A stretch of 64,000 nt of DNA from Octopus sinensis (GCF_006345805.1 NC_043005.1:65038001-65102000); one strand, 5' to 3'; shown: positions 3,163 through 60,382, numbered from the stretch's first letter. Translations and numbers: made by a program. Notes: generated by a model from the letters alone, not told the origin.

Positions 3163-4875
3163 TACATCGATATAAAGGAAGACGATGTAATAAAGGCTAT
3201 AGATGAAATGAAAACAGACTCAGCTATTGGCCCCGATGGATTCCCGGCAATCCTCCTAAAAAAGTATGTAAGAGAGTCCTAGCAAGACCACTGCAGTTCC
3301 TCTTTCAGAGCTTCCTTGCAGCTGGCAAACTTCCAAGAAAACTGAAGGAAGGTAAAATATGCCCTATTCATAAAGGAGGTAGCAGAGCGGAGGCCAAGAA
3401 ATACAGACCTATCTCTCTCACCTCACACATCAGCAAGGTCGTGGAACGAATAGTCAGAAGGAAACTAATCACCTTCCTTGAAGAAAATGACTTGCTGCCT
3501 GATACCCAACATGGTTTCCGACCAGGAAGAAGCTGCTTAACTCAGCTCCTACAACACTATGACTGGGTGCTGAAACAACTGCTCAACCACTCAAATGTGG
3601 AAGTCATATATCTCGACTTTGCAAAGGCCTTTGATAAAGTCGATCATGGAATGATATGTCACAAACTGCGTGATCTTGGCATAGTTGGAAAATTGGGAGA
3701 ATGGCTTCATGACTTTCTGAAGAATAGAAGTCAGGTGGTAGCAGCCAATGGGGCCACTTCCATTAACACGCAAATAATGAGCGGTGTTCCGCAGGGCACT
3801 GTTTTGGGACCACTACTGTTCATAATGGCCCTCTCAGACATGCCCTCAGCCACGCAGAGAGCCACGATCACAAGTTATGCAGATGATACAAAATTTTCAC
3901 AGGCAATACAGAAACCTGAGGACACTAAGCACCTGCAATGTGAGCTGGACGAAATATACAAGTGGGCTGAAAAGAATAGCATGCAGTTCAATGCCGAAAA
4001 GTTTCAAGCTTTATACTATCAGCATGCAAGACTAAATGCAATACCCAATGAATACACTGGACCCGGAGGGATTGCAATCCCAGAGGCACAATCAGTGCGT
4101 GACCTGGGTATTCACATGAGTGATGACGCGACCTTTCATGTACATGTTGCTAAACTGGCAATGAAATGTAGACGGCTGGCTGGATGGATTCTTAGAACCT
4201 TTAGAACAAGAGAACAAGAAACCATGATGGTCCTCTGGAAGACACTTGTCCTAAGCCACTTTGACTATTGCTCTCAGCTATGGTCACCATCCAGTGTCAA
4301 GTTGATCACAGAACTTGAGGCGATCCAACGAAGCTACACGAAGAAGATAGCCTCTGTGCAGCATATGAGTTACTGGGAAAGACTCAAGAGATTAAAGCTC
4401 TATTCCCTGGAGCGTAGGCGAGAAAGATATGCCATAATATATATCTGGAAGATCCTGGAAGGACTTGTCCCAGACTTTGGCATCGAGAGTCACACAAATG
4501 CCAGAACCGGACGCCACTGCGTAGTACCAAGGATTCCAAATTTGCCATCAAGATGTAGGACAAGATATTGTGATAGCCTGGGCTTCAGAGGCCCACAGCT
4601 CTTCAATATCCTCCCGAAGAACCTGAGGGACCTGCATGGTGTGGATGCTGATTTATTTAAAGTAGGACTGGATCTCTTCCTGCCAGGTGTCCCGGATGAA
4701 CCAACTTCGCGGCAGGAGGTGCAGATGAGGGCAGCTGCATCGAACTCTCTCATGCATCAGATGGCGTTTGCTAAAAAGCATCCGTAAGGTAAAATCGTGT
4801 AGCAAACCAAATGGCGGTGCCCCAGCATGGCCACAGCTCATTAGCTGAAACTGGAAAAATCAAATTCAAAATCAA

Positions 4876-7099: not shown

Positions 7100-10000
7100 C
7101 TCATATCTGGAAATTCTGACCTCATATCTGGAAAGACAAGTGATGAAAGCACGGGTCACCAATGTGTCACCTCACAAGGACCAACTTAGAGAGGTGGCAA
7201 TTGTGTAGAAGCATGGCGAGATAATTGCACTCAAGTTCACTTTCCAATAGCAATAATTCTAGAGTTTCATTCTAGAGTTCCAGGTTCCACCTGGAGACGT
7301 AGCAGATATTCCGGATTACACACACTTACTTCGAAGACAATGAGCAAATGCGTGTTGCAGTAGAATGAAAAGAAACCCTTCAAGGCAGTCTGCCCTATGG
7401 ACGAGAGGAGACCTGAATACCTTAAACCATGGCTGCTACCAACACCCTAACTTCTGCAACTTAATAAACAAGCGCAGAGGCAGCGATAAAAGGTGGAATG
7501 GGATCCTCCTCTGCACGAATATGCAGAGTAGATCCGGAACTCCTCTCTTCACTACGACCACGACCACAACCTTATTACTTTTCTCAGCTCTGAGCTCGAA
7601 AATGTAAATAGCGTCACCATTTTCCTTTCAGTGAAGCCTCTAGCCCCACTGCCAGGTGGTAGTACTCGACAGTCCATCCCTGTTCTCCGCACCCTTCGAT
7701 TAATCCCTAATACCGCTTCTTCTTCCGTTGATCTGCATTAGCGATGTTCTTCCCATGGCACTGTCAGCTCAAACAAAATTCCAATTTTCCGTTCTGTTCC
7801 ATAGGATTAAGTCCGGTCTAATTTGTTGTTTTTATAAGTGGAAATATTAACAGTCTTTCAAAAACCGCGGCCAGCTCCCAGTAACCCTTCCATCTTTCTT
7901 CTGTCTCGAATACTTTATCTGAAAGCCTGGCCTTATGTCCTATTCCCTCCATCATGAAGTTTCTCCTTCCGCACTTTTCCACTTTTGGGTACTCCCCACT
8001 ATATATCTCCCCATCTTCTCCTTGATTGCTGCGCTTATGACACGGAGGACTTGATTGTGACGCCATTTATACCTGTCTAGTGCTAGCCTACAGTTTGACA
8101 GAGCATGTCTCACCGTCGTTTCTCTCCGCATCTACATTCATTAATTGTTTGTATATTCCACCGAACTAAATTCGCCGGTGAAGGTAAAACATCGAAGGTA
8201 GACTTGATCAGGAAGGATGTTCTTACTTGTTTCCAAGCCAAAACTTTCTTCCATGAGATTCTGCACCTGATCACGTATTCCTCCCATCTCAGGCACTGTC
8301 TCTGTTGACTGCATTGCACCAAATGTACATTTCGCCTTTCTCTTTCCTCCTTTTACACTTTGTGTATCTCTGCCACTTTCATCTCTTTTACACTGCTCAG
8401 GCAATGTGGCTTGAAATTGTGCAACTCTAGACCGGCTCTTGCTTCATGTGTCGCTCCGACTATATCGGCATGCCTTAGATTTCCTTTGAAAGGTTTTCTC
8501 GGATGTTCTGATCTTTCGAATACCTTAGCATCTGATCTTTCGAAAACCTTACTTTTCGAATAACCCTAACCCTAACCCCAACACTTTCCTGCCTTATATT
8601 CTTCGGCGATTGATGTTATCAGCAGTTGCAGCACGGGTTTTCCATATAGTGCAGTTGTATTCAGTGGTTTTGGAAGACCAAGCCATTTTCTGATAAACAC
8701 ACTGCATCTTTGTTCCATCCTTTCTACTCTACTCGAGGCTATTTCATACCCTTGCAATGGCCACATTATCCTTGGATACAGTCAAAATTGCAGTATCCAA
8801 CATTTGAATTTCCACAGTAGTGTTGTTCTGTCAATTGACTTTAGTCCCTGTTCCATTAAATCGTGTTTCTTTGCTTTGATTCTTAGCATTTAGTAAATCT
8901 CTATACTAACTGCCGAGTCTCTTTACTGGTTGTTCTTTCACCGCCGGTACATCTTCACCTTCTATCCTGAATTTCACTTCTTTTTGGACTCCTTTCATGA
9001 AAGCCACGCTTCGAGATTTTTTGCCTTGAATTACATTCTCTAAGGTTCCATCTGCTGCTTCTCTACTTTCTGATAATACAGTAACGTCGTCCATAAAAGC
9101 CCTTAATGGTGTCTTTGTAACAGATTTCTCACAGTTTGTTGATCTTAGTAACATGTCCATGGCAAGCACAAATAAGATGACTGATAATCGTGCATCCAGT
9201 TGCAATACCTACTTCAAGCCGTCGCCACTTTGTTGTGAGCTTTTCTGCTGTAAATCTCATCCTCAATTTATCGTAGTAACACATGAACATTCGTTGAACA
9301 TCTTCTGGAATCCAAAAGATGTCCATAGCTGCTTGAATTAGTGCGTGTGGAACAGATCCATATGCATTCGCAAGATCTAGCCATACAATGCGCAGGTTTT
9401 TCTTCAGTTGTTTTGCACAGTTGATAGCTTCCCGGATGGCAAATGCATGTTCTATGCATCCAGGGATTGCTTCATTAACATATCCGTTATGCTGTACGAA
9501 TTTTATAATTCGTCTGGCAATAATTCCAAACATGATTTTCCTATCGGTATTTTGTAGTGAAAATGGGTTTGAATTGCTCTAGTGTTTTTGCCTCCTTCTG
9601 TTTAGGTAAACAGATACCTTCCGCTAAACACCATCGTTCTGCTATGCTTTTCTTCTTCCACATTTCCCTTATCAGTGCAAATAGTTGTAAACGTAATTTC
9701 GGGCAATACTTATAAACCTTGTGGCAAACTCTGTTGTTCCCTGATGAACTTTTTGCTCTTACTTTTCTAATGAACTCATCAATTTCTTCCGTCTGATGTC
9801 ATTCAATTCGAATGGTACCCTTGGTTCAGGTGGTTTCTTCAGCCCAAGCATTACTAGGAGTACTTTATTTCTATCTGCGTCGCTGTATGTCCCTTTAAGA
9901 TGGTGTTCTTCTTTAGTGCAATCCAGTCTTCCGCTCTTACTTTTCAGTAAACAAACGTTTAGCATATTGATATGAGCTGTTTACAAAACTACGAACGTTC

Positions 10001-10510
10001 TTTTCTCTCTCCTTTCTTCTGTTTTTCTTTCTTTTTCTTTCTTGTTCTCGATGCCCCTTTCTTATCATTCTATACAGCTGTTTTAACCTTTCTCTTTCCT
10101 CCTCCTTTGCATCCCTCTCTCTGTTTCTGCGTTTTTTCTTCTCGTATCATTGCGATCCGCCTTTTTCTCCTCAATGGTCCCCACCTTTGCTGATGATTCT
10201 CCATTCCCTGTTGTTTCAAGGCCAAATCTTTTCTTTCCTTCCTGATATATTATATTAACCAAGATTTCGAGCTTTTGTTCGTCGTTCCCTTTAAATTTGG
10301 TGGTCATCCTTGCCACCTCCTCACCGAATTTCCCGCTACATCATTTGCCTTCGGCAAATAGAGAAATGTATTGACAGATAGAGAGAGGATAATAACCTTC
10401 CAACATTTTCAGCATTGCATGACTTCGAAGCTATTTTTAACGGAGTGCGAATTGATTTCAGAATAAAGCTGTCTTCAATAATCCAATTAATGCTATGTAT
10501 TGAGGAGTAG
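7100..10510 (-). mobile_element. HERO-like RLE non-LTR retrotransposon, degraded but nearly complete
   Basis: WLDLANAYGSVPHALI, LEVGIATGCTI, AFMDDVTV, RKWLGLPK, SFLIKSTFDVLPSPANLVRW, RYKWRHNQVL and ELTVPWEE motifs in order (RT, Zn knuckle, RLE). Many stops and frameshifts. Confidence 0.85.
8561..8578 (-). repeat. (TTAGGG)3 interstitial telomere-type repeat inside the HERO ORF
   Basis: taaccctaaccctaaccc on +, next to a tandem duplication of taaggtattcgaaagatcag. Confidence 0.85.
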
Positions 10511-10841
10511 CCGTGGATGCTGGTCATGTTGTTGTTGTTGTTGCTGCTGCTGTTGTTGCCAACTGCTCTTGTTGATACTGCTTTCGTTCAGAAGTTGGTC
10601 GTTTGGTCGTAAATGTCCTTGGGAATTTTATGACCAGCTTCATCATATTTCGGAATTTATGTTTGTCCTTTGTTTTTATTTTGAAGCGAAATCTAACTTC
10701 GAGCAACATTTACAAATCAATTTTTAGTCACTATTTTCTCAAACTGGCAAAGCTATGTAGGGGGTTCAAATTTTGATTTTGCACCCCTTAAAAATTCTAG
10801 GGTTACAAGTGCACCCCTTGCACCTCTGTTCCCGAGCCCTT

Positions 10842-11067
10842 GTACACCAAGCATATGCATCACAACCATATGTGTGCGACATGGTGATATCATATCAAGA
10901 TAAACAGCTTATAACCTCTTAAGTGGGGCTCAGTTAGAATTTTGTTCAGGTCGAGTAGTCCGTAGCGCTAAAAAGTCCCTGAATAAAGGATTGTTTAAGG
11001 ATGATGAACAAAACACTCCTTTTTTCCAGAGGTGAATTATTCAAATCCAAAAGAATTTCTCTCAACT
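10842..11067. mobile_element. Internal fragment of the ~630-bp TTA/TAA-flanked dispersed repeat
   Basis: Aligns by eye to the central part of 13354-13983 (acaaccatatg..catatcaagataaacagc..gaggtgaattattcaaa..ctctcaac). Confidence 0.75.
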
Positions 11068-14520: not shown

Positions 14521-14748
14521 TCATTGTACATTTTTTTCTTTCAGATCTATACATAACGTTTCTTCAGCATCCCATTGCGGGGAAACGCTATCTTGATCGC
14601 CTGGACTCACTCTGGCCATTCGCAGGGAGACGAGATGATAGTCTTCGTGAGAAGACTTCTGAAGACTCGGAGATCCGTGGGTACATTTTGTAGTTACACT
14701 TCTTGTTTCCATATGGTCTCGAACTTTCTTTGCTAGAGCTGCGCGAAC
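14521..14748 (-). CDS. Terminal coding exon (helix 8 and C-tail) of a class B1 CRF/DH44-type GPCR
   Basis: Acceptor ccaatttttcag|GTT, phase 0. VRAALAKKVRDHMETRSVTT...KNVQ* continues CFMNSD| exactly as CRHR1 NSE|VRSAIRKR. AATAAA overlaps the TGA. Confidence 0.82.
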   Translation of the reverse strand, partial: VRAALAKKVRDHMETRSVTTKCTHGSPSLQKSSHEDYHLVSLRMARVSPGDQDSVSPQWDAEETLCIDLKEKNVQ

Positions 14749-24835: not shown

Positions 24836-25145
24836 ACACGATGGCTGCCCCTCGTTATCGAGTATGGCCATTGTACGAAGCTTAACTGCTGTTGCTGCAG
24901 TGATCGAATGTGACTTGTATCTGCTTTTTAAGGCTACAGCCAGCCATTCAATTGAGACTCACAGCACCATCAACAATCATGAATAATGTTGTTATCGTGC
25001 AATGCCTGTGCAAGAATATTTTTTTTAGAGTGAGGGAAGGCTGTGCACTGAGTCAATCCCACTCAAAAAGCAACAGCAGCCATATTCCGAAAAGAAGAAC
25101 AAGTCAACATCATCGGTAACCACTGAGCCGCAGAATTTATGTCGG
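24836..25145. repeat. Unclassified dispersed repeat (copy 1)
   Basis: cctcgttatcgagtatggccattg..agcaacagcagccata.tccgaaaagaagaacaagtcaacatcatcg is shared with 32391-32610. Confidence 0.8.
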
Positions 25146-25344
25146 AGTTATCCCAGTTACCTGAGTTACCTTCTCCTAGAAGGATGCCCTAACAAAGGCT
25201 AGGAGTACTTCACTCCCAATGGTTTAACAGCGCGATCGGGTATTCAGTCCGATTATTTCTGTTCCCGCGCATGATACAGCCGTAAGCCTTAAGAATGAAA
25301 AAAACCCCACATTTATCGGATGGCCGTTGACTCTCAAGAGTCAT

Positions 25345-25378
<34 letters not shown>

Positions 25379-25391
25379 ATATATACACACA

Positions 25392-25424
<33 letters not shown>

Positions 25425-25426
<2 letters not shown>

Positions 25427-28400
25427 CATTATTGGTGAATTGAAGAAATGGAGCTGAACGCAGATTGAACAGAAATCGTTTTATTTCATTCTACACGTGT
25501 TTCGAAAGGCACAAATTACCAAAATCCGATTGAATAATGGGACCATATTGTGTCTTTCTCTTCAGGAAGAAAAAAGGAAATCCGTTGGAAAAACAAAAAC
25601 AGAACAGAGGCAGAGCAAAAAACAAATCGAACTGTGCTCCTAAGAGCCCATGGCGAAATGTTTATCAGTGTATGTTGAGAGAACCGGTGGCTGAAGAATT
25701 CAACAGGTCAGGCATCGGTCAAACATGTGGGTGAGGGTGTATAGATGTTCTTTGTGACCGAGAATAAAGTTCTGACTATTTAAATAATATTGGATGTTTT
25801 ATAAGGGGCGAGAAAAAAATCTACTTAGAGAGACGTGTGTGTGTATACTGTTCTATATATGTGTGTGTTGGCGAGGGGTAGAAAACATTTTTGTGTACGT
25901 GTGTGCGTTTGATCGTTCGGCTGTCAGTGGCTACTGCCGTGATAACCGTTGGGTGGCAGAAAGAAAAAAAATAAAGAAAAATTATATATATATATTTTAT
26001 GTTTTATGTGTGTGTGTGTGTGTTCATCTAAGCCTACCTTGACAAGGAAACCCCCCGCTGTGAAAAAACAAGCCCCGTTTGTCTTACAGGAGTAATTTCC
26101 CTTGCAGTGGTTAATTGTAGATATCTTAAAATCTATTTCAGAATTTGTTACCAAGGGCTATGGGTGCCGGTCTTATTTAAACGCTATTTAAAGGCCAGAT
26201 AAGTGTAACGCCGCCAATGGGGGCATCGAAAAGCCGACTGTAAAAGCCCGTTTAATCCGGCCTCTGGCAAACAAAATATGGAAGAGTTCGGAGACACAAA
26301 GGTTGCACTGTCTTCTGCCCCTATCAAATGGGAGGGCCACCGACAAAATTGACCATTCCAGCCTATAGCTTAAGTTCGCATCCCTCAGTCGCCATATTAG
26401 CTTACTGAGTCCCGTGGTCTGGCGCTTGTTCACGTCCCGAAAAGTTGCGTAATGGTTGGAGACACGCAAAGACAATCTTGAGGATGATGCCCCTATATAA
26501 GTGAAGGCATCTGAGTCCGTGTAAACCTTGCATTGGTAGACGGCGTTTTTGATCTTGGAGTTCGCCGACGTGAATCTTACTCTGCTAGGATTGGTTTCTG
26601 AAATTAGAACTGCGTTCCTGTCACTATATTCGTTCCGAGACCTGCAGCCGCTTACTACTCTATTTTCCACTACGTCACTATTAACTATAGGAATAACCCC
26701 TGATTCTCCACTATCTATCAGAGTGCTGTCATTGCTACTGCCCGTGGTACTGCTATTGCGGGAAATGATGCTGGGGATGCTAAGGGGCTCTCTACCCTAC
26801 TCCCATTGTTACCATCAACCACAACACCCCTATTTATAACTATACCCCTAGTGGGTACTCCCTGGCTGGAGCTGAGATTATGTCACTGTACTGGCTCTCA
26901 TATCATTATTACTACTATAATTATTCCTACTGAGCATTAAACCGGGAGCGGAAGAGGCTGTGCCTCCGGAAAAAGGTGATAGGGTCTTAGTAAGTAGCCT
27001 ATTATTATGGGAGGCGATTATCTGGGGCGAGGTTTTTAGTGTTGGAGAAAGCTATCCTAACTTTATGTGAGTTAACCGTGGAGTAATTTGGAATTTCTGG
27101 GGAAGTTATTGCGATGGCTTGTCTAAACATGAGGGGGAGGTTAGTTCTAATCTGCTTACCAAAGGGGATTACAAACCATATATGCTTATTCCTATCAGTG
27201 TGATGGGTCGGGCGCCAGCTCTCGCATTTGGGTGGGTGATTCTCGGATGAATAACGGGTCTTGGGTTAGTGTAAGACCTCCCGGACCGATAATTATCCTT
27301 GTTCGCTAAATTTAAAGCGGGAGCGACTACCCCGGTATCCGCCGCGCTCCCGTCCTTACTTAAAATGTTAATGTTATTATATACGGCCCTATCCTGATGA
27401 CCGAATGATGGCATCGGAAGGGCCGGATCATATAAATTACCTTCTGCCTATAACCGGCCTTGGATAGTGCGGCGTTATAAAAATCCGCTTTCTGCATAAA
27501 AATATCGGCACTGGCGGACAGGCCAGACAATCTTAGAGAGATGTTTTTAACCAAATTGTCTGTTACGGTTTTGGCATGATTTGAGAAGACACTGACATAC
27601 TTCAAATTAGTGGAAGGCTTATGGTAAGGGCAGTATGAGTCGCTATTAAGGTTAAGTGTAACGTCTAGGAAATTAGCCTTGGTGAGTTCGTTATCAAAAA
27701 CTATACTCATGCCCATTCTATTAAAAAACCTAGCTAACCTGCTCTTAGTTTTCTGCACTATTCTGTTCGTGGTGTTTTGCAGGTAAAACAGACAATCGTC
27801 ACGATACAGGCCGCCCGCGATTCCGGGAATTGATCGGACAATCGTAGAGAGAGAATATAATTCCGACCAAATCGGCTATCTGCGCACTATCCGAACTACC
27901 CATAGGCACATCAAATTCATTGGGAGTATCCTTACGGATCCACAGCTTATTATCAAACTTAATAAACGATTTCCTGGCAACTAAAATGATATCTATCTCT
28001 TCTCTGGTGAGGCCTGCCTTGTTGTGAGCATGCCAGAGGGCCTTATTTAGCACACTAGGTTAATCGAGGGGTAGAAGCTGGCGATATCAAACTGAATGAA
28101 CCTAGTACGGTTCTTATTGGGGATGGGAGAGAACCACTTCACTACCTGCGAGGAGTTGGCCCAGAGGCTGAGCTTCAGCTTGTTACTAAACTAGGGATAT
28201 ATTTATCTAAAATGTACTTACTGATTATCCCGATATCAGATCTAGCAGGGCATATGAGTCTTAGCGCTGGGTTGGTGTGGAAGTTAGGTTTATGGTCCTT
28301 CACTATAAATCTGGGTTGCTTGGGGCTAAGCGGCTGAGTTCTCATTTGAATTCGGTGTTTAAATATTATATCCTTAATTTCCAAGTTTACCTTCCTCAGG

Positions 28401-28819
28401 GTACTCCAATTGGTTTTCTATAATTTTTCTTGATCTCTTTACCGAGTAATCTAGGTACTGCTTAATGGGATCTTGTATGTGTTCCTGGTCTTGTCGGACT
28501 GGACCAGGACTCCGTCCGTTCTATTAATGTCCTTGGTAATTTTATCTAGGTATCTGAGGTGGGCATTTCTCCTGGGTGACTTCCTGAACTTAATCTTTCT
28601 AACTATGTCCCACAAGTCGTCCTCAAACTTCTTCAGTCTTGGGTTCGGTGGCGGCGTATCCAATGTTTTAAAAAGCCGGCCGTATTCGGACGATGCAGTT
28701 GTCGGTTCGATTTTAGATCTTCGTTCTCGTGGAAGAAAATGAGCCATCTTATCCGGTTTATGAATGCGTTGGTTTTACAAACCAACTCCTTAAGGAAGGC
28801 ATCCTTTGGTGGTATAGGA
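25425..28819 (-). mobile_element. Penelope-like element, left arm of palindrome (RT, C-terminal GIY-YIG, pseudo-LTR with HHR)
   Basis: PIPPKDAF..FINRIRW, LKKFEDDL, QSDKTRN, KDHKPNF..RLICPARSDIG, FIQFDIASFYPSI, FDVPMGSSDSAQIADLVG, GLYRDD, NFLDVTLNL, VYQC..YIG..R..NH, CNLCVSE. Single-base indels break the frame. Confidence 0.95.
25484..25572 (-). ncRNA. Type I hammerhead ribozyme, intact core (left arm, sense to the host GPCR)
   Basis: tttcttc-CUGAAGA-gaaagacac...gtgcctttc-GAAA-CACGUG-UA|gaatgaaa. Predicted GUA cleavage between 25492 and 25491. Confidence 0.8.
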
Positions 28820-30527
28820 CATAGTTAGAAAGATTAAGTTCAGGAAGTCACCAGGAGAAATGCCCACCTCAGATACCTAGATAAAATTACAAGGACATTA
28901 ATAGAACGGACGGAGTCCTGGTCCAGTCCGACAAGACCAGGAACACATACAAGATGCCCATTAAGCAGTACCTAGATTTACTCGGTAAAGAGATCAAGAA
29001 AAATTATAGAAAAACCAATTGGAGTACCCTGAGGAAGGTAAACTTGGAAATTAAGGATATATATTTAAACACCGAATTCAAATGAGAACTCAGCCGCTTA
29101 GCCCCAAGCAACCCAGATTTATAGTGAAGGAACCATAAACCTAACTTCCACACCAACCCAGCGCTAAGACTCATATGCCCTGCTAGATCTGATATCGGGA
29201 TAATCAGTAAGTACATTTTAGATAAATATATCCTAGTTTAGTAAACAAGCTGAAGCTCAGCCTCTGGCCAACTCCTCGCAGGTAGTGAAGTGGTTCTCTT
29301 CCATCCCCAATAAGAACCGTACTAGGTTCATTCAGTTTGATATCGCCAGCTTCTACCCCTCGATTAACCCTAGTGTGCTAAATAAGGCCCTCTGGCATGC
29401 TCACAACAAGGCAGGCCTCACCAGAGAAGAGATAGATATCATTTTAGTTGCCAGGAAATCGTTTATTAAGTTTGATAATAAGCTGTGGATCCGTAAGGAT
29501 ACTCCCAATGAATTTGATGTGCCTATGGTAGTTCGGATAGTGCGCAGATAGCCGATTTGGTCGGAATATATATCTCTACGAATTGTCCGATCAATTCCCG
29601 GAAATCGCGGGCGGCCTGTATCGTGACGATTGTCTGTTTTACCTGCAAAACACCACGAACAGAATAGTGCAGAAAACTAAGAGCAGGTTAGCTAGGTTTT
29701 TTAATAGAATGGGGGGCATGAGTATAGTTTTTGATAACGAACTCACCAAGGCTAATTTCCTAGACGTTACACTTAACCTTAATAGCGACTCATACTGCCC
29801 TTACCATAAGCCTCCACTAATTTGAAGTATGTCAGTGTCTTCTCAAATCATGCCAAAACCGTAACAGACAATTTGGTTAAAAACATCTCTCTAAGATTGT
29901 CTGGCCTGTCCGCCAGTGCCGATATTTTTATGCAGAAAGCGGATTTTTATAACGCCGCACTATCCAAGGCCGGTTATAGGCAGAAGGTAATTTATATTGA
30001 TCCGGCCCTTCCGATGCCATCATTCGGTCATCAGGATAGGGCCGTATATAATAACATTAACATTTTAAGTAAGGACGGGAGCGCGGCGGATACCGGGGTA
30101 GTCGCTCCCGCTTTTAATTTAGCGAACAAGGATAATTATCGGTCCGGGAGGTCTTACACTAACCCAAGACCCGTTATTCATCCGAGAATCACCCACCCAA
30201 ATGCGAGAGCTGGCGTCCCGACCCATCACACTGATAGGAATAAGCATATATGGTTTGTAATCCCCTTTGGTAAGCAGATTAGAACTAACCTCCCCCTCAT
30301 GTTTAGACAAGCCATCGCCAATAACTTCCCCAGAAATTCCAAATATTACTCCACGGTTAACTCACATAAAGTTAGGATAGCTTTCTCAACACTAAAAACC
30401 TCGCCCAGATAATCGCCTCCCATAATAATAGGCTACTTACTAAGACCCTATCACCTTTTTCCGGAGGCACAGCCTCTTCCGCTCCCGGTTTAATGCTCAG
30501 TAGGAATAATTTAGTAGTAATAATGAT

Positions 30528-31250
30528 ATGAGAGCCAGTACAGTGACACATAATCTCAGCTCCAGCCAGGGAGTACCCACTAGGGGTATAGTTATAAATA
30601 GGGGTGTTGTGGTTGATGGTAACAATGGGAGTAGGGTAGAGAGCCCCTTTAGCATCCCCAGCATCATTTCCCGCAATAGCAGTACCACGGGCAGTAGCAA
30701 TGACAGCACTCTGATAGATAGTGGAGAATCAGGGGTTATTCCTATAGTTAATAGTGACGTAGTGGAAAATAGAGTAGTAAGCGGCTGCAGGTCTCGGAAC
30801 GAATATAGTGACAGGAACGCAGTTCTAATTTCAGAAACCAATCCTAGCAGAGTAAGATTCACGTCGGCGAACTCCAAGATCAAAAACGCCGTCTACCAAT
30901 GCAAGGTCTACACGGACTCAGATGCCTTCACTTATATAGGGGCATCATCCTCAAGATTGTCTTTGCGTGTCTCCAACCATCACGCAACTTTTCGGGACGT
31001 GAACAAGCGCCAGACCACGGGACTCAGTAAGCTAATATGGCGACTGAGGGATGCGAACTTAAGCTATAGGCTGGAATGGTCAATTTTGTCGGTGGCCCTC
31101 CCATTTGATAGGGGCAGAAGACAGTGCAACCTTTGTGTCTCCGAACTCTTCCATATTTTGTTTGCCAGAGGCCGGATGGTAAACGGGCTTTTACAGTCGG
31201 CTTTTCGATGCCCCCATTGGCGGCGTTACACTTATCTGGCCTTTAAATAG
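30528..31250 (+). CDS. PLE linker plus GIY-YIG endonuclease (open 240-aa segment)
   Basis: AVYQCKV...YIGASS..LRVSNHHATF...LSKLIWRLR...LEWSIL...QCNLCVSE...CPH. Confidence 0.85.
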   Translation: MRASTVTHNLSSSQGVPTRGIVINRGVVVDGNNGSRVESPFSIPSIISRNSSTTGSSNDSTLIDSGESGVIPIVNSDVVENRVVSGCRSRNEYSDRNAVLISETNPSRVRFTSANSKIKNAVYQCKVYTDSDAFTYIGASSSRLSLRVSNHHATFRDVNKRQTTGLSKLIWRLRDANLSYRLEWSILSVALPFDRGRRQCNLCVSELFHILFARGRMVNGLLQSAFRCPHWRRYTYLAFK

Positions 31251-31856
31251 CGTTTATAAATAAGACCGGCACCCATAGCCCTTGGTAACAAATTCTGAAA
31301 TAGATTTAAGATATCTACAATTAACCACTGCAAGGGAAATTACTCCTGTAAGACAAACGGGGCTTGTTTTTTCACAGCGGGGGGTTTCTTGTCAAGGTAG
31401 GCTTGATGAACACACACACACACACATAAAACATAAAATATATATATATAATTTCTTTATTTTTTTCTTTCTGCCACCCAACGGTTATCACGGCAGTAGC
31501 CACTGACAGCCGAACGATCAAACGCACACACGTACACAAAAAATGTTTTCTACCCCTACGCCAACACACACATATATAGAACAGTATACACACACACACG
31601 TCTCTAAGTAGATTTTTCTCGCCCCTTATAAAACATCCAATATTATTTAAATAGTCAGAACTTTATTCTCGGTCACAAAGAACATCTATACACCCTCACC
31701 CACATGTTTGACCGATGCCTGACCTGTTGAATTCTTCAGCCACCGGTTCTCAACATACACTGATAAACAGTTTCGCCATGGGCTCTTAGGAGCACAGTTC
31801 GATTTGTTTTTTGCTCTGCCTCTGTTCTGTTTTTGTTTTTCCAACGGATTTCCTTT

Positions 31857-31944
31857 TTTCTTCCTGAAGAGAAGACACAATATGGTCCCATTATTCAATC
31901 GGATTTTGGTAATTTGTGCCTTTCGAAACACGTGTAGAATGAAA
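31857..31944 (+). ncRNA. Type I hammerhead ribozyme, intact core (right arm)
   Basis: CTGAAGA 31864-31870, GAAA 31925-31928, palindromic CACGTG, GTA cleavage after 31936, helix I tttcttc/gaatgaaa. Confidence 0.78.
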
Positions 31945-32390
31945 TAAAACGATTTCTGTTCAATCTGCGTTCAGCTCCATTTCTTCAATTCACCAATAAT
32001 GTTTTAATTTAAATTATCCGCACCAACGCACGGTTGCAACGCCAGATGGTTGTACCTCCAACCGTGCTGTTCACTGCTGTGATTTTTGCTACTAAGGTAT
32101 CGGTTTAACTTTTGATTAATCTAACAAGATTATTCATCTTTCTATTTCACATAAATTATATATATATATATATATATATAAATACATACCCATATATACA
32201 TACGTAAACATATACCCACATACATATGCATCCTTATACACATACATCAATACATATCCATACATAGATGCATGCATATACATATACATACACATACATA
32301 TGCACTAATACATATACATATATATATATATACATATATAGACACACACAGACACAAACACATATACATACATACATACATACATACATA

Positions 32391-32610
32391 CACGGTGGTG
32401 GTGACTGCTCCCTCGTTATCGAGTATGGCCATTGCACGAAGCTTAATCAGTGTTGTTATCGTGCAATTCCTGTGCAAGAAGATTTTTTTAAAGTGAGGAA
32501 AGGCTGTGAACTGAGTCAATCTCACTCACTAAGCAACAGCAGCCATAATCCGAAAAGAAGAACAAGTCAACATCATCGATAACCACTGAATCGTAGGTTT
32601 TATGTCATGC
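32391..32610. repeat. Unclassified dispersed repeat (copy 2)
   Basis: Direct-orientation homolog of 24836-25145, about 85 nt shorter, embedded in TACA repeats. Confidence 0.8.
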
Positions 32611-54448: not shown

Positions 54449-56555
54449 GGTTGTAAAGATCAACTACTCATCAATAAGATGATCTTAGAAGATTGTCACA
54501 AACGACACTAAAACTTATTAATAGCCTGGATAGACTATAAAAAGGCTTTTGATAGCCTACCACATAGCTGGATTAAGAAATGCCTAGAAATGTATAAGAT
54601 AGCACCTACTCTGCGAAACTTTTTGTCTGTAAGTATGAGATCATGGAGAACCACACTAACTTTGAACAGTGACAATGAATCTCTAAATGCGGGTGATGTA
54701 AAAATTTCTTGTGGCATTTTCCAGGGTGACTCACTATCACAACTCCTCTTCTGTTTAGCCTTAATACCTATCTCAAAACTGCTCAATGACGCGCAGTACG
54801 GATATAAAATGTTTGATAAAAATATAAATCATCTCATTTACATGGATGATTTAAAGCTCTTTGCAAAAAATGACCAACAACTCAAGAGCTTACTAGCGAT
54901 TGTCAAACAATTCAGTGATGACATCAGAATGCAATTTGGCCTCGATAAATGTGCAAAGGAAAAATGACAGAAACACCTAACGTTAACCTTGACTAGCAGA
55001 ATGTCATAAAAGAATTAGACCCAGCGGAGAACTACAAGTATCTAGGGGTAATTAAAGGAGACGGAATAAGGCATTCAGAGATGAAGTAAAAGATCAGGAG
55101 AGAATGTTATCGCAGAGTAAGAGCACCACTCAAGACAGAGCTGAATGCGAGAAACAGGATCGAAGCGATCAATGCATTAGCCATACCAGTCGTGACTTAC
55201 AGTTTCAATATCGTTAACTGGTCAATTACTGAAATATGTAATCTTGACAGAAAAATACGAAAACTGTTGACAATGCATACAATGCACCACCCTAAGGCAG
55301 ATACAGAACGACTTTATCTGCAAAGAAAAGTGGGAGGCCGTGGACTTTTACAACTGGCAATAACAATGAAGATTGCTACAATTGGCCGAGACACCTACCT
55401 GAAAAACTCTGAGGACTGGATGTTAAAACTTGTCTCAAAACATGAAAACAAGAAAGCATCATACTCAGTAACAAAACAGGCAAAGGAATATCTAAGTGAA
55501 TTCCGAATACAACCAATTTCGGAATTAGAGATAGACATACAAGAAACAAGCACAGAAAAAGCTAAGCGCATGAAAACCCGTGCTAAATCTTCGGCCTTAG
55601 ATATTCTGAATGATAAATGGCAAGAAAAACCTCTCTATGGCAAATACCCAAAGAGAGCGAATAATGCAGATGTTGACAAAGCCCTGACCCATCAATGGCT
55701 AATGGCCTCTGGCTTAAAATCTGAAACAGAGGGGTTTATCATAGCAGCTCAAGATCAATGCCTACCAACAAGAAACTACCAGGCCAACATATTAAAGATC
55801 GGCAGTAGCCCAACATGTCGTGTATGTCAGCAACAAAATGAAACCATTGATCATGTGGTCTCCAAGTGCAGTCTTCTAGCGCCTACAGAGTATCTCAACA
55901 GGCATGATAGAGCTGCACAATATATTCACTGGGTAATCTGCAAAAACCTGGATTTGCCCCATGAGCAAAACTGGTGGGAACACAAACCACCTCCAGTGCT
56001 TGAAAATGACCACATCTCACTCCTCTGGAACTTCACCATTCAAACTGACAGAAAGATAGATGCAAATAGGCCAAACATCATATTGAAAAACTTCAAACAA
56101 AGAACATGCCTCCTCATTGATATGACTGTCTCAATCGATATAAACGTATCTGCCAAGACCTACCAAAAATTGAGCAAATATAAAGATCTTGAAATAGAAA
56201 TCAGCAAAATGTGGAAGCTGAAGACTAAAACAATACCTGTTGTCGTAGGTACCCTGGGAATGATAGCAAAAGGGGCTGATTGCTACCTAACTCAGATACC
56301 AGGAACCTCAAAATGGCAGAAATTCAAAAGATAGTGCTCATGGGAACTGCTCATATCCTACGCAAAATACTTTCTATGTAATCTCGAGGTTTAAAACAAA
56401 CATTTGTTTTAGACATCCACTAATACAACACAAAAAACAACCAAATATATGGCACACTAGGCATAACAACAACGTGAACTTCAAACCTCTTGTCTCTTGA
56501 GGTCTCTGGGTGAGACTTGGAGCCAACTTGTACAAATATAAGGCAAAAGTCAAAC

Positions 56556-57082: not shown

Positions 57083-57124
57083 ATCGCTGTTCATGAAGCA
57101 ATAAAGAATTGCAAGAAGTAGACC
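57083..57124 (-). CDS. 42-nt TM7 exon of the class B1 GPCR
   Basis: cttttattttacatttcag|GLLLAILYCFMNSD|gtaagt. A phase-0 42-nt exon here is characteristic of secretin-family receptors (GFFVSVFYCFLNSE in CRHR1). Confidence 0.93.
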
Positions 57125-60121: not shown

Positions 60122-60257
60122 CTGGGTTGCTTGCAGGAAAGCAATGATATAGCTGAACACTTCTTTTGAAGTCGGTGTGGACCCCGGGTTTACAATAAAG
60201 AGGAGGTAGTTTATACCAAGCAAAGGAATTAAAATTCCAGACGCCCTGAAAGCTTTC
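60122..60257 (-). CDS. TM6-ECL3-TM7a exon of a class B1 CRF/DH44-type GPCR
   Basis: tttctttttctttgattttgaag|G-KAFRASGILIPLLGINYLLFIVNPGSTPTSKEVFSYIIAFLQATQ|gtgagt, 136 nt. PLLG motif; parallels CRHR1 [24 protein letters not shown]...SFQ. Confidence 0.95.
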
Positions 60258-60382
60258 CTTCAAAATCAAAGAAAAAGAAATATTTAAATGTAAACTAGAA
60301 TAAATTACGTCAAATCTATATAACTTAATAAACACTAAATAGCTTTAATTGCACTGCAAAAAAAAAATTAAAACTTTACATT

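What the first reader, a model, noticed from the sequence alone, without database searches (positions are those of the whole stretch)
25484..31944. Antisense-locked intronic hammerhead: a possible self-cleavage switch in the GPCR pre-mRNA
Both arms carry a core-intact type I HHR (CUGAAGA / GAAA / GUA) with a 2-bp helix III capped by palindromic CACGUG, the minimal PLE-type design that is reported to cleave as a dimer. On the host (minus) strand the left HHR is in the active orientation. Its perfect antisense (31857-31944) is transcribed 6.3 kb earlier, so hairpin formation should mask it, and editing or unwinding could release it. Cleavage of the last intron could change splicing or the yield of the receptor's C-terminal exon. 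The regulatory model is inference.
Basis: partly seen in the sequence, partly recalled or inferred. Interest (0 to 1): 0.85.

Follow-up and report, generated by a model that had tools for sequence, protein, structure and literature searches.

The report
Inverted Penelope-like retrotransposon pair with hammerheads
The two "antisense-locked" hammerhead ribozymes are the ordinary 3'-end ribozymes of two truncated copies of a Penelope-like retrotransposon that landed head-to-head in a (TA)n repeat inside the last intron of an octopus neuropeptide-type receptor gene; nothing indicates a gene-regulation switch.

Summary
A core-intact type I hammerhead (CUGAAGA / GAAA / GUA, 2-bp helix III inside the palindrome ACACGUGU) sits at 25492-25565 (- strand) and 31864-31936 (+ strand). 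Both lie in the 42-kb last intron of a class B GPCR on the minus strand.

The 88-nt "antisense" is only the tip of a 6.6-kb near-perfect palindrome. Its arms are 25422-28610 and 28817-32006, around a 206-nt unique centre. Each arm is a 5'-truncated copy of a Penelope-like element (PLE) of the Hydra clade:
- an RT whose modelled family representative matches telomerase RT best;
- a C-terminal GIY-YIG nuclease, a DKT motif and no CCHH motif;
- (TA)n at the ends.

The copies meet 5'-to-5' with 3 nt of microhomology. I found the same head-to-head layout in three loci of distant relatives. An Octopus sinensis tandem copy carries the homologous hammerhead, with four compensatory pair changes.

Hammerheads in PLE terminal repeats, inverted truncated copies and (TA)n targeting are all published. 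A lone minimal hammerhead, buried in a -159 kcal/mol duplex, is expected to be inactive. The switch idea remains unsupported speculation. Verdict: a new member of a known kind, of low interest.

The parts
25422..28819 (-). Left PLE copy, in sense on the host strand. It is 5'-truncated at about codon 13 of the ORF. Its 3' end is joined directly to (TA)n, and it lacks the last ~150 nt of the element.
   Evidence: Arm alignment. The N-terminal frame PIPPKDAFLKEL..NRIRWL matches the start of the family and O. sinensis ORFs. It ends at the same internal site as the inverted 36-nt tail in O. sinensis.
28817..32180 (+). Right PLE copy. It is 5'-truncated about 206 nt deeper than the left copy. Its 3' end is complete, running through the 150-nt terminal segment into the element's own terminal (TA)n.
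   Evidence: Window 31861-32160 aligns with O. sinensis L001 12168-12452, including the terminal (TA)n. The TA tract is 32157-32180.
28611..28816 (-). Unique centre of the palindrome. This is the extra 5' coding sequence present only in the left copy.
28817..28819 (.). Head-to-head (5'-to-5') junction. The 3 nt GGA/TCC are shared by both copies (microhomology), and there is no filler.
   Evidence: Read from the sequence and compared with the O. sinensis ORF start.
25480..25575 (-). Hammerhead of the left copy. The core and H17 span 25565-25492, and the predicted cleavage is at 25492|25491. Helix II has 11 bp with one A.C mismatch.
31854..31948 (+). Hammerhead of the right copy. The core and H17 span 31864-31936, and the predicted cleavage is at 31936|31937. 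A 1-nt deletion in helix II weakens that helix. On the host strand this reads as the antisense.
29237..30409 (+). RT-like region of the right copy. Its motifs include FIQFDIASFYPSI, (M)GSSDSAQIADL, GLYRDDCL and NFLDVTL. It is split over several frames.
   Evidence: The fold of a family representative matches TERT and other RTs.
30879..31250 (+). GIY-YIG-type endonuclease domain of the right copy (AVYQ..YIGASS..R..H.., CNLC..E, CPH). The left-copy counterpart is 26191-26553 on the minus strand.
   Evidence: hhalign against the C-terminal domain of the family, probability 99%, E 2e-18. Pfam GIY-YIG is weak, hitting 3 of 32 relatives. Coordinates.
25344..25425 (.). (TA)n microsatellite abutting the left copy. 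It is probably the target site.
   Evidence: (TA)n targeting of the Hydra clade is published (PMC8557442).
14749..57082 (-). Last intron of the host class B GPCR (42.3 kb), which contains the insertion. The flanking exons are 57083-57124 (TM7, GLLLAILYCFMNSD) and 14524-14748 (C-terminal tail plus stop).
   Evidence: tblastn of P0121, a 499-aa product (HRM + 7tm_2) of a 2,075-nt contig assembled from a public sequencing run, taken to be a transcript. Splice sites.

Best explanation
Region 25422-32180 is one insertion of a Penelope-like retrotransposon (PLE) of the Hydra clade, an octopus family with a unit length of about 3.66 kb. It consists of two 5'-truncated copies joined 5'-to-5', with their 3' ends facing outward into a (TA)n microsatellite. 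The hammerheads are the element's own 3'-UTR (pseudo-LTR) ribozymes, about 220 nt upstream of its terminal (TA)n. They form an inverted pair only because the whole element does.

Likely mechanism (inferred): the GIY-YIG nuclease cut both strands of the AT-rich target. Both 3'-OH ends then primed reverse transcription of PLE RNA, from two different internal start sites 150 nt apart. The two incomplete cDNAs were joined in the middle through 3 nt of microhomology.

Both copies lack the start of the ORF and any upstream pseudo-LTR, so they were dead on arrival. In the host pre-mRNA the arms should fold into a long intronic double-stranded RNA hairpin of about 3.2 kb, which buries the single sense hammerhead. 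That hammerhead is a dimer-dependent minimal type with no partner in cis, so no self-cleavage of the receptor pre-mRNA is expected.
For: Shown here:
- The palindrome has 3.2-kb arms at 98% identity, about 8 substitutions and 40 mostly 1-nt indels, around a 206-nt asymmetric centre.
- Both arms encode the same RT-plus-nuclease ORF.
- There are 1,708 homologues, the best from Octopus sinensis at 72% identity.
- An AlphaFold model of relative P0002 (pLDDT 86) matches telomerase RT first (3du5, E 4e-8), then retron, DRT, group II intron and R2 RTs.
- The window's C-terminal domain matches the family's nuclease domain (hhalign 99%).
- The family consensus shows the published Hydra-clade diagnostics: RWK, DKT, CxCX5C, no CCHH, CxxC and CxH (against PMC8557442 section 11).
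- The window copy itself shows DKT, no CCHH, CNLC and CPH.
- (TA)n lies at both ends.
- The O. sinensis locus holds tandem units of 3.66 kb in the order nuclease - hammerhead - ~200 nt - (TA)n - next ORF. It also holds a 36-nt inverted tail that ends at the same site as the window's left copy.
- The hammerhead is conserved there with 4 compensatory pair changes, including ACACGUGU to ACAUAUGU. 88% of cells pair, against 38-55% when the partners are slid.
- Head-to-head 5'-truncated pairs occur in loci L002, L003 and L004 of distant relatives, and hammerheads lie just downstream of nuclease ORFs in L003 and L004.
- Two copies co-fold into the 8-bp intermolecular helix III.

From the literature:
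- Hammerheads in PLE pseudo-LTRs, and their inactivity as monomers (PMC4209133).
- Inverted 5'-truncated copies, tails and the microsatellite bias (PMC8557442).
- A PLE protein that cuts and extends both strands and starts reverse transcription at two internal sites (PMC11167929).
Against: - Pfam RVT_1 does not hit the window ORFs or their relatives. Sequence searches of the PDB find nothing. The RT call therefore rests on motifs and on a predicted fold of a relative that is 39% identical.
- The Hydra linker motif CxCX5C is lost in the octopus copies. The RWK motif reads RWL.
- Rfam scores the hammerhead below its threshold (14.9 against 34 bits).
- The covariation rests on only two independent sequences. 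The O. sinensis copy also has G instead of C at 11.1.
- The double-priming mechanism is inferred from the architecture and from in vitro work on a different PLE clade.
- The many 1-nt indels between the arms suggest a noisy assembly, so fine details such as frameshifts and the extra A in helix II may be sequencing errors.
Confidence: 0.9

Rival explanations
1. One reading: the intronic sense hammerhead is a regulated self-cleavage switch of the GPCR pre-mRNA. The upstream antisense arm keeps it off, and editing or unwinding releases it, changing splicing or the yield of the C-terminal exon.
For: The geometry is correct. There is a sense motif on the host strand in the last intron, the antisense is transcribed 6.3 kb earlier, and the masking duplex is very stable. 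Intronic ribozymes that affect expression exist; the CPEB3 ribozyme is one (PMC10919898).
Against: - The arrangement is the standard insertion product of this transposon clade.
- The insertion is very young and shows no sign of conservation.
- Helix III has only 2 bp, so a dimer is needed, yet the transcript holds one sense copy. Single minimal PLE hammerheads gave no detectable cleavage in vitro (PMC4209133).
- In the hammerhead fold the motif is 3.4 kcal/mol (left) to 4.5 kcal/mol (right) less stable than its own minimum-energy fold. The competing duplex is about 140 kcal/mol more stable.
- For the anole PLE, no RNA-seq reads began or ended at the hammerhead cleavage site (PMC11167929).
Confidence: 0.03
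2. The palindrome is an assembly artefact, for example a long-read hairpin or chimeric read, and the genome really holds a single PLE copy.
For: The arms differ mostly by 1-nt indels (40 indels against about 8 substitutions). That pattern is typical of long-read consensus error, and palindromic artefacts are known for such data (my own knowledge).
Against: The palindrome is not symmetric. It has a 206-nt unique centre that continues only one copy's ORF, and only the right arm carries a 150-nt extension. Both outer flanks are distinct genomic sequence. The same head-to-head layout occurs in three independent assemblies of relatives, and a short inverted tail occurs in O. sinensis.
Confidence: 0.05
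3. By-product function: the intronic 3.2-kb inverted repeat acts as a hairpin double-stranded RNA source whenever the receptor gene is transcribed. It could feed endogenous siRNA production or A-to-I editing, silence this PLE family, or slow processing of the intron. This would add to the best explanation rather than replace it.
For: Near-perfect complementarity over 3.2 kb with a 206-nt loop on one transcript. The host gene is expressed as a spliced mRNA in a related cephalopod. Long inverted repeats are known substrates for Dicer and ADAR (my own knowledge).
Against: No expression, small-RNA or editing data could be examined here. The intron is 42 kb long and full of other repeats, and nothing singles this one out functionally.
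Confidence: 0.15

Closest known systems
Hydra clade of C-terminal-endonuclease Penelope-like elements (Craig et al. 2021, PMC8557442)
   Same: [quoted passage not shown] DKT replaces DKG, there is an RW(K) motif, and no CCHH lies inside GIY-YIG. CxxC and CxH flank the conserved E and N. A hammerhead sits near the 3' end, insertion is into (TA)n, and the clade is already recorded in molluscs.
   Different: The octopus family is longer (unit ~3.66 kb, ORF ~900 aa, against <3 kb), because a low-complexity insert separates RT and nuclease. Its linker CxCX5C cysteines are lost, and RWK reads RWL. Its hammerhead has an unusually long helix II of 54-55 nt.
Minimal, dimer-dependent hammerheads of metazoan PLEs (Cervera & De la Pena 2014, PMC4209133)
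   Same: Type I topology, an intact core, a G10.1-C11.1 pair, an enlarged helix II, and a 2-bp helix III inside a palindrome that can form an extended intermolecular helix III. It lies in the element's terminal repeat. The paper also notes pairs of motifs on opposite strands.
   Different: There is no unpaired nucleotide between A9 and 10.1. Helix II carries a long distal extension that is not conserved in O. sinensis. Activity was not tested.
PLE insertion architecture: an inverted 5'-truncated copy adjacent to the 5' end, and a 30-40-bp tail (PMC8557442); cleavage and extension of both strands with two internal start sites (PMC11167929)
   Same: A head-to-head inverted pair, two distinct 3' end points 150 nt apart, a 36-nt inverted tail in the O. 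sinensis copy, and an AT-rich target.
   Different: In this window both copies are truncated, and there is no full-length or tandem copy beside them. The mechanism was shown in vitro for a Poseidon-clade element from a lizard, not for this clade.
Intronic self-cleaving ribozymes with proposed regulatory roles: the mammalian CPEB3 ribozyme (PMC10919898) and the amniote intronic hammerheads HH9/HH10 (the latter from my own knowledge)
   Same: A self-cleaving-ribozyme motif in sense orientation inside an intron of a neuronal-type gene.
   Different: Those ribozymes are conserved at orthologous positions and cleave as monomers. This one is a very recent transposon copy of a dimer-dependent type, and its own inverted duplicate masks it.

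Membership tests
Hammerhead ribozyme, type I (Rfam RF00163) | Conserved core: C3 U4 G5 A6 N7 G8 A9, G12 A13 A14, A15.1-U16.1 and H17 (not G) | tested here: met
   CUGAAGA ... GAAA ... U-A in both copies. The Rfam alignment covers the full model, positions 1-45.
Hammerhead ribozyme, type I (Rfam RF00163) | Three helices around the core, with helix I open | tested here: met
   A constrained fold gives helices I, II and III. 88% of cells pair, with 4 compensatory changes against O. sinensis. Only two independent sequences support this.
Hammerhead ribozyme, type I (Rfam RF00163) | Score at or above Rfam's gathering threshold (34 bits) | tested here: not met
   14.9 bits, E 0.59 in a 161-nt search. 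No hit at gathering or in the 8.5-kb E-value scan. The 50-nt insert in helix II and the 2-bp helix III are penalised.
Hammerhead ribozyme, type I (Rfam RF00163) | Site-specific self-cleavage | not testable with these tools
   Needs in vitro transcription or RNA end mapping.
PLE minimal / dimeric hammerhead (PMC4209133) | Helix III of 0-2 bp with palindromic 15.2-16.2 and loop 3, allowing a dimer | tested here: met
   ACACGUGU in the window and ACAUAUGU in O. sinensis; both are palindromes. Two copies co-fold into the 8-bp intermolecular helix.
PLE minimal / dimeric hammerhead (PMC4209133) | Conserved unpaired nucleotide between A9 and 10.1 | tested here: not met
   G10.1 follows A9 directly in both window copies.
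PLE minimal / dimeric hammerhead (PMC4209133) | Located in the terminal repeat / UTR of a PLE | tested here: met
   About 610 nt downstream of the nuclease stop and about 220 nt upstream of the terminal (TA)n. In the O. sinensis tandem it lies between two ORFs.
Penelope-like element, Hydra clade (PMC8557442) | Reverse transcriptase related to telomerase RT | tested here: met
   The model of relative P0002 (39% identical to the window ORF) matches TERT structures best, then other RTs. Pfam RVT_1 and PDB sequence searches are negative, so this is met by fold and motifs only.
Penelope-like element, Hydra clade (PMC8557442) | C-terminal GIY-YIG endonuclease without the CCHH motif; CxxC and CxH near the conserved E and N | tested here: met
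   Window: AVYQCKVY..YIGASS (one Cys only), CNLCVSE and RCPH. hhalign 99% to the family domain. Pfam GIY-YIG E 1e-4 in 3 of 32 relatives.
Penelope-like element, Hydra clade (PMC8557442) | RWK motif, and DKT in place of DKG | tested here: met
   Family consensus MRWKA and ADKTRN. Window: QSDKTRN and NRIRWL, where K is replaced by L.
Penelope-like element, Hydra clade (PMC8557442) | Linker CxCX5C zinc-finger-like motif | tested here: not met
   Present in the family consensus as CNCRxKxxC. In the window it reads SGCRSRNEYS, and in O. sinensis the cysteines are also gone.
Penelope-like element, Hydra clade (PMC8557442) | Insertion into (TA)n; tandem and/or inverted 5'-truncated copies | tested here: met
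   (TA)n at both ends. An inverted pair in the window, tandem units plus an inverted tail in O. sinensis, and head-to-head pairs in L002-L004.
Regulatory intronic ribozyme (CPEB3 / HH9-HH10 type) | Conservation of the ribozyme at the orthologous intron position across species | not testable with these tools
   No orthologous cephalopod intron could be fetched. The near-identity of the arms indicates a recent insertion.
Regulatory intronic ribozyme (CPEB3 / HH9-HH10 type) | Efficient cleavage as a single copy within the host transcript | not testable with these tools
   The sequence argues against it: a 2-bp helix III, one sense copy, and a masking duplex (PMC4209133).

The most novel reading that the evidence does not exclude
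Transcription of a neuropeptide-receptor gene in a cephalopod obligatorily produces a 3.2-kb intronic double-stranded RNA hairpin from an inverted PLE pair. A-to-I hyper-editing or helicase unwinding of that hairpin would expose the sense hammerhead. The hammerhead could then pair through its palindromic helix III with PLE transcripts in trans and cut the pre-mRNA upstream of the C-terminal exon. Receptor output would thus be coupled to editing activity or to transposon expression.
Probability: 0.03. Interest if true: 0.6.

Novelty: new member of a known kind. Interest (0 to 1): 0.2.

Why it matters
It matters mainly for annotation. Inverted hammerhead pairs in invertebrate introns should be read first as footprints of Penelope-like element insertion, not as riboswitch-like devices.

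The locus is also a clean natural example of a published behaviour. It shows two outward-facing 3' ends at two different start sites, a 3-nt microhomology junction, and (TA)n at both ends. That matches the in vitro finding that a PLE protein cuts and extends both DNA strands, and it extends the finding to the Hydra clade in a mollusc.

The insertion also flags a recent, possibly polymorphic, 6.7-kb hairpin-forming element in a neuropeptide-type receptor gene. That could be checked cheaply in population or RNA data.

Tried and rejected
- Rfam at gathering thresholds over the whole window gave nothing. An E-value scan of 8.5 kb returned only microsatellite-driven miRNA false positives. An E-value scan of the relatives' loci was likewise swamped by (TA)n hits.
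- A generic pattern search for CTGANGA..GAAA..TH was uninformative.
- Pfam on individual and stitched ORF pieces, and on relatives, gave no RVT_1. PDB sequence searches with one sequence and with a 32-sequence profile found no RT. The RT call needed a structure prediction and Foldseek.
- The word-indexed homologue search found nothing for the GPCR exons or for the low-complexity-rich nuclease frame.
- Regular-expression hunts for the receptor's last exon failed. It was found only after a related receptor sequence (P0121) came from the exhaustive search.
- I looked for the element's ORF start and 5' UTR in the window, to test for a tandem or full-length copy. There is none, and no further copy of the element either.
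- I considered a foldback or TIR DNA transposon. I rejected it because each arm is a co-linear copy of an RT-nuclease ORF with its 3' UTR.
- I considered the flanking 90%-identical direct repeats as a target-site duplication. I rejected that because they are far more diverged than the arms and lie in a different order relative to the microsatellites.

Full report
**1. What is in the sequence**

On the plus strand the right arm reads ...UUUUUUCUUC CUGAAGA [54-nt helix II] GAAA CACGUG UA | GAAUGAAAUAAAA. The left arm is its reverse complement, so that motif is in sense on the minus strand.

Every conserved hammerhead position is present:
- C3-A9;
- the G10.1-C11.1 pair;
- G12-A14;
- A15.1-U16.1;
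- H17 = A.

Helix III is only A-U plus C-G closing ACGU. The eight bases ACACGUGU are therefore self-complementary.

Rfam gives only partial support. Hammerhead_1 aligns over its full length at 31858-31942 but scores 14.9 bits against a threshold of 34. The 50-nt insertion in helix II is penalised. Nothing in the window passes a gathering threshold.

A strict descriptor of my own finds only these two sites in the window. It finds 0.11 per dinucleotide shuffle. Because the two sites are one duplicated motif, this statistic alone is modest.

**2. The "antisense" is a whole inverted element**

The complementarity does not stop at 88 nt. Arms 25422-28610 and 28817-32006 are 98% identical in inverted orientation, around a 206-nt unique centre. 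Inside the arms there are about 8 substitutions and 40 indels, mostly of one base. That ratio points to long-read consensus errors on top of very low real divergence.

One of those indels lies in the ribozyme. The left copy has GAAAGACAC where the right has GAAGACAC. This gives the left copy an 11-bp helix II with a single A.C mismatch. The arms are therefore nearly, but not perfectly, antisense.

G+C content is 43-45% inside the region and 32-38% around it.

**3. What the element is**

Each arm encodes the same protein in several broken frames.
- The polymerase motifs are KDHK..RLICP, FIQFDIASFYPSI, PMGSSDSAQIADL, GLYRDDCL and NFLDVTL.
- A low-complexity stretch follows them.
- The C-terminal domain reads AVYQ..YIGASS..R..H ... 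CNLC..E ... CPH.

Pfam does not recognise these pieces. A homologue search with the stitched polymerase part returned 1,708 proteins. The best is from Octopus sinensis (72% identity, mis-named "myb-like protein I"). The rest are about 700-aa proteins from many assemblies.

A 32-sequence alignment (A1) gave a confident AlphaFold model of relative P0002 (pLDDT 86, pTM 0.85). Its best Foldseek matches in the PDB are telomerase reverse transcriptases (3du5, E 4e-8). Retron, DRT, group II intron, R2 and LINE-1 reverse transcriptases follow.

The window's C-terminal domain matches the family's C-terminal domain (hhalign 99%, E 2e-18). That family domain hits Pfam GIY-YIG weakly, in 3 of 32 members.

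The consensus carries exactly the features Craig et al. 2021 list for the Hydra clade of Penelope-like elements:
- an RWK motif, and DKT instead of DKG;
- a CxCX5C linker;
- no CCHH inside GIY-YIG;
- CxxC and CxH near the conserved E and N;
- canonical hammerheads;
- insertion into (TA)n;
- hosts that include molluscs.

The window copy shows DKT, no CCHH, CxxC and CxH. It reads RWL instead of RWK, and it has lost the linker cysteines. The O. sinensis copy has lost them too.

**4. Architecture and the related octopus locus**

In O. sinensis locus L001 the family forms tandem units of about 3.66 kb. The order is ORF - 3' UTR - hammerhead - about 200 nt - (TA)n - about 55 nt - next ORF.

Comparison with L001 fixes the ends of both window copies:
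- **Right copy.** It continues 150 nt past the end of the palindrome, up to its own terminal (TA)n at 32157-32180.
- **Left copy.** It stops at 25422, directly against a (TA)n tract at 25344-25425.
- **O. sinensis tail.** A 36-nt inverted tail next to (TA)n ends at the same internal site as the window's left copy.

Neither window copy reaches the ORF start. The left copy begins at about codon 13, and the right copy begins 206 nt further in. The two meet at 28817-28819 and share GGA/TCC. No ORF start, 5' UTR or further copy exists in the window.

Loci of distant relatives show the same head-to-head pairs of 5'-truncated copies (L002, L003 and L004). Hammerheads lie just downstream of nuclease ORFs in L003 and L004. 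(TA)n tracts lie beside the copies; they show up as false miRNA hits.

The literature already describes each piece:
- inverted 5'-truncated copies, short tails and a microsatellite bias for PLEs (PMC8557442);
- dual hammerheads on opposite strands (PMC4209133);
- a PLE protein that cuts and extends both target strands and starts reverse transcription at two internal sites (PMC11167929).

The most economical reading is one insertion event. Both nicked strands of a (TA)n target primed cDNA synthesis, and the two incomplete cDNAs were joined by microhomology. That mechanism is inferred, not shown.

**5. Is the hammerhead real?**

The O. sinensis pseudo-LTR is only about 75% identical to the window's, yet it keeps the motif. 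Four base pairs changed on both sides:
- one in helix I;
- two in helix II (C-G to U-A, and A-U to G-C);
- one in helix III, where ACACGUGU became ACAUAUGU, still a palindrome.

The A.C mismatch in helix II becomes C-G. 88% of cells pair, against 38-55% when the partners are slid. Two copies co-fold into the 8-bp intermolecular helix III expected for the dimeric design.

Three caveats apply. Only two independent sequences support this. The O. sinensis copy has G at 11.1. Activity was not tested.

**6. Host gene**

Minus-strand exons were located through similarity and a related assembled transcript.
- The PDB sequence search matches the exon at about 60122-60259 to TM6-ECL3 of corticotropin-releasing-factor receptors.
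- A 42-nt exon at 57083-57124 (cag|GGT...GAT|gtaagt) encodes GLLLAILYCFMNSD.
- The exhaustive protein search found P0121, a 499-aa HRM + 7tm_2 receptor encoded on a 2,075-nt contig assembled from a public sequencing run, taken here to be a transcript.
- The last 75 residues of P0121 map at 92% identity to 14524-14748, which has a clean acceptor and a stop codon.

The last intron is therefore 14749-57082, and it contains the insertion.

**7. The switch hypothesis**

On the host transcript the antisense arm is made first and the sense arm, with its hammerhead, last. The local duplex is predicted at -159 kcal/mol, against -16.7 for the motif's own fold. In the hammerhead fold the motif is 3.4 to 4.5 kcal/mol less stable than its minimum-energy fold. 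Masking is thus physically plausible, but it follows from the inverted transposon pair and is not evidence of design.

The motif needs a dimer, and the transcript has one sense copy. Single minimal PLE hammerheads gave no detectable cleavage in vitro, and dimers cleaved weakly (PMC4209133). For the anole PLE, no RNA-seq reads began or ended at the hammerhead cleavage site (PMC11167929). The insertion is very young.

I rate the switch at about 3%. A more realistic side effect is that the intron forms a long double-stranded RNA hairpin, a possible substrate for editing or small-RNA pathways. That is untested.

**8. Verdict**

- The feature is a head-to-head pair of dead-on-arrival copies of a Hydra-clade Penelope-like element. 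Each copy carries the element's own hammerhead.
- It is a new member of a known kind and ordinary in biological terms.
- It has some value as a natural illustration of double-strand priming by PLEs, and as a caution for annotating intronic hammerheads.

Noticed in passing
window 24842-25143 and 32402-32606: A ~90%-identical direct repeat flanks the insertion on both sides, and these are its only two copies in the window. Each copy is preceded by (TA)n then (CATA)n microsatellites, and the left copy carries a ~100-bp extra segment. It looks like a dispersed SINE-like repeat with a microsatellite tail. The PLE may have landed in the tail of the right-hand copy.
   Followed up: partly
window 25422-32006 (arm-to-arm alignment): The arms differ by 40 indels, mostly of 1 nt, but only about 8 substitutions. 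This pattern suggests uncorrected long-read consensus errors. Many of the frameshifts in the ORFs, here and probably elsewhere in the window, may not be real.
   Followed up: partly
L001 (O. sinensis CM016882.1) 10001-11056; protein P0001: The gene model named "myb-like protein I" is a fragment of this PLE's ORF (RT thumb plus the low-complexity linker). It is an annotation error in the public record.
   Followed up: partly
L002 2947/2950, L003 3027/3028, L004 849/853: Relatives of the element from three other assemblies also sit as head-to-head pairs of 5'-truncated copies, with junctions within 0-3 nt. The layout looks like a frequent product for the whole clade.
   Followed up: partly
window 3441-4787 (+), 9129-9533 (-), 54590-56334 (+): Other retrotransposon reverse-transcriptase ORFs of LINE type. 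The one at 54590-56334 lies in the same last intron as the PLE pair. The window is largely transposons and microsatellites.
   Followed up: no
L002 202-273, 584-655, 966-1036: Three tRNA matches (42-44 bits, above Rfam's threshold) spaced 382 nt apart, next to a Hydra-clade PLE pair in an unidentified assembly. This is a tandem tRNA or tRNA-derived repeat.
   Followed up: no
window 30412-30880 and L001 10400-11170: Between RT and nuclease the octopus family carries a low-complexity insert of about 150 aa, rich in Ser, Asn and Gly. Other Hydra-clade proteins lack it. It coincides with the loss of the linker zinc-finger cysteines, although the element still sits in (TA)n.
   Followed up: partly
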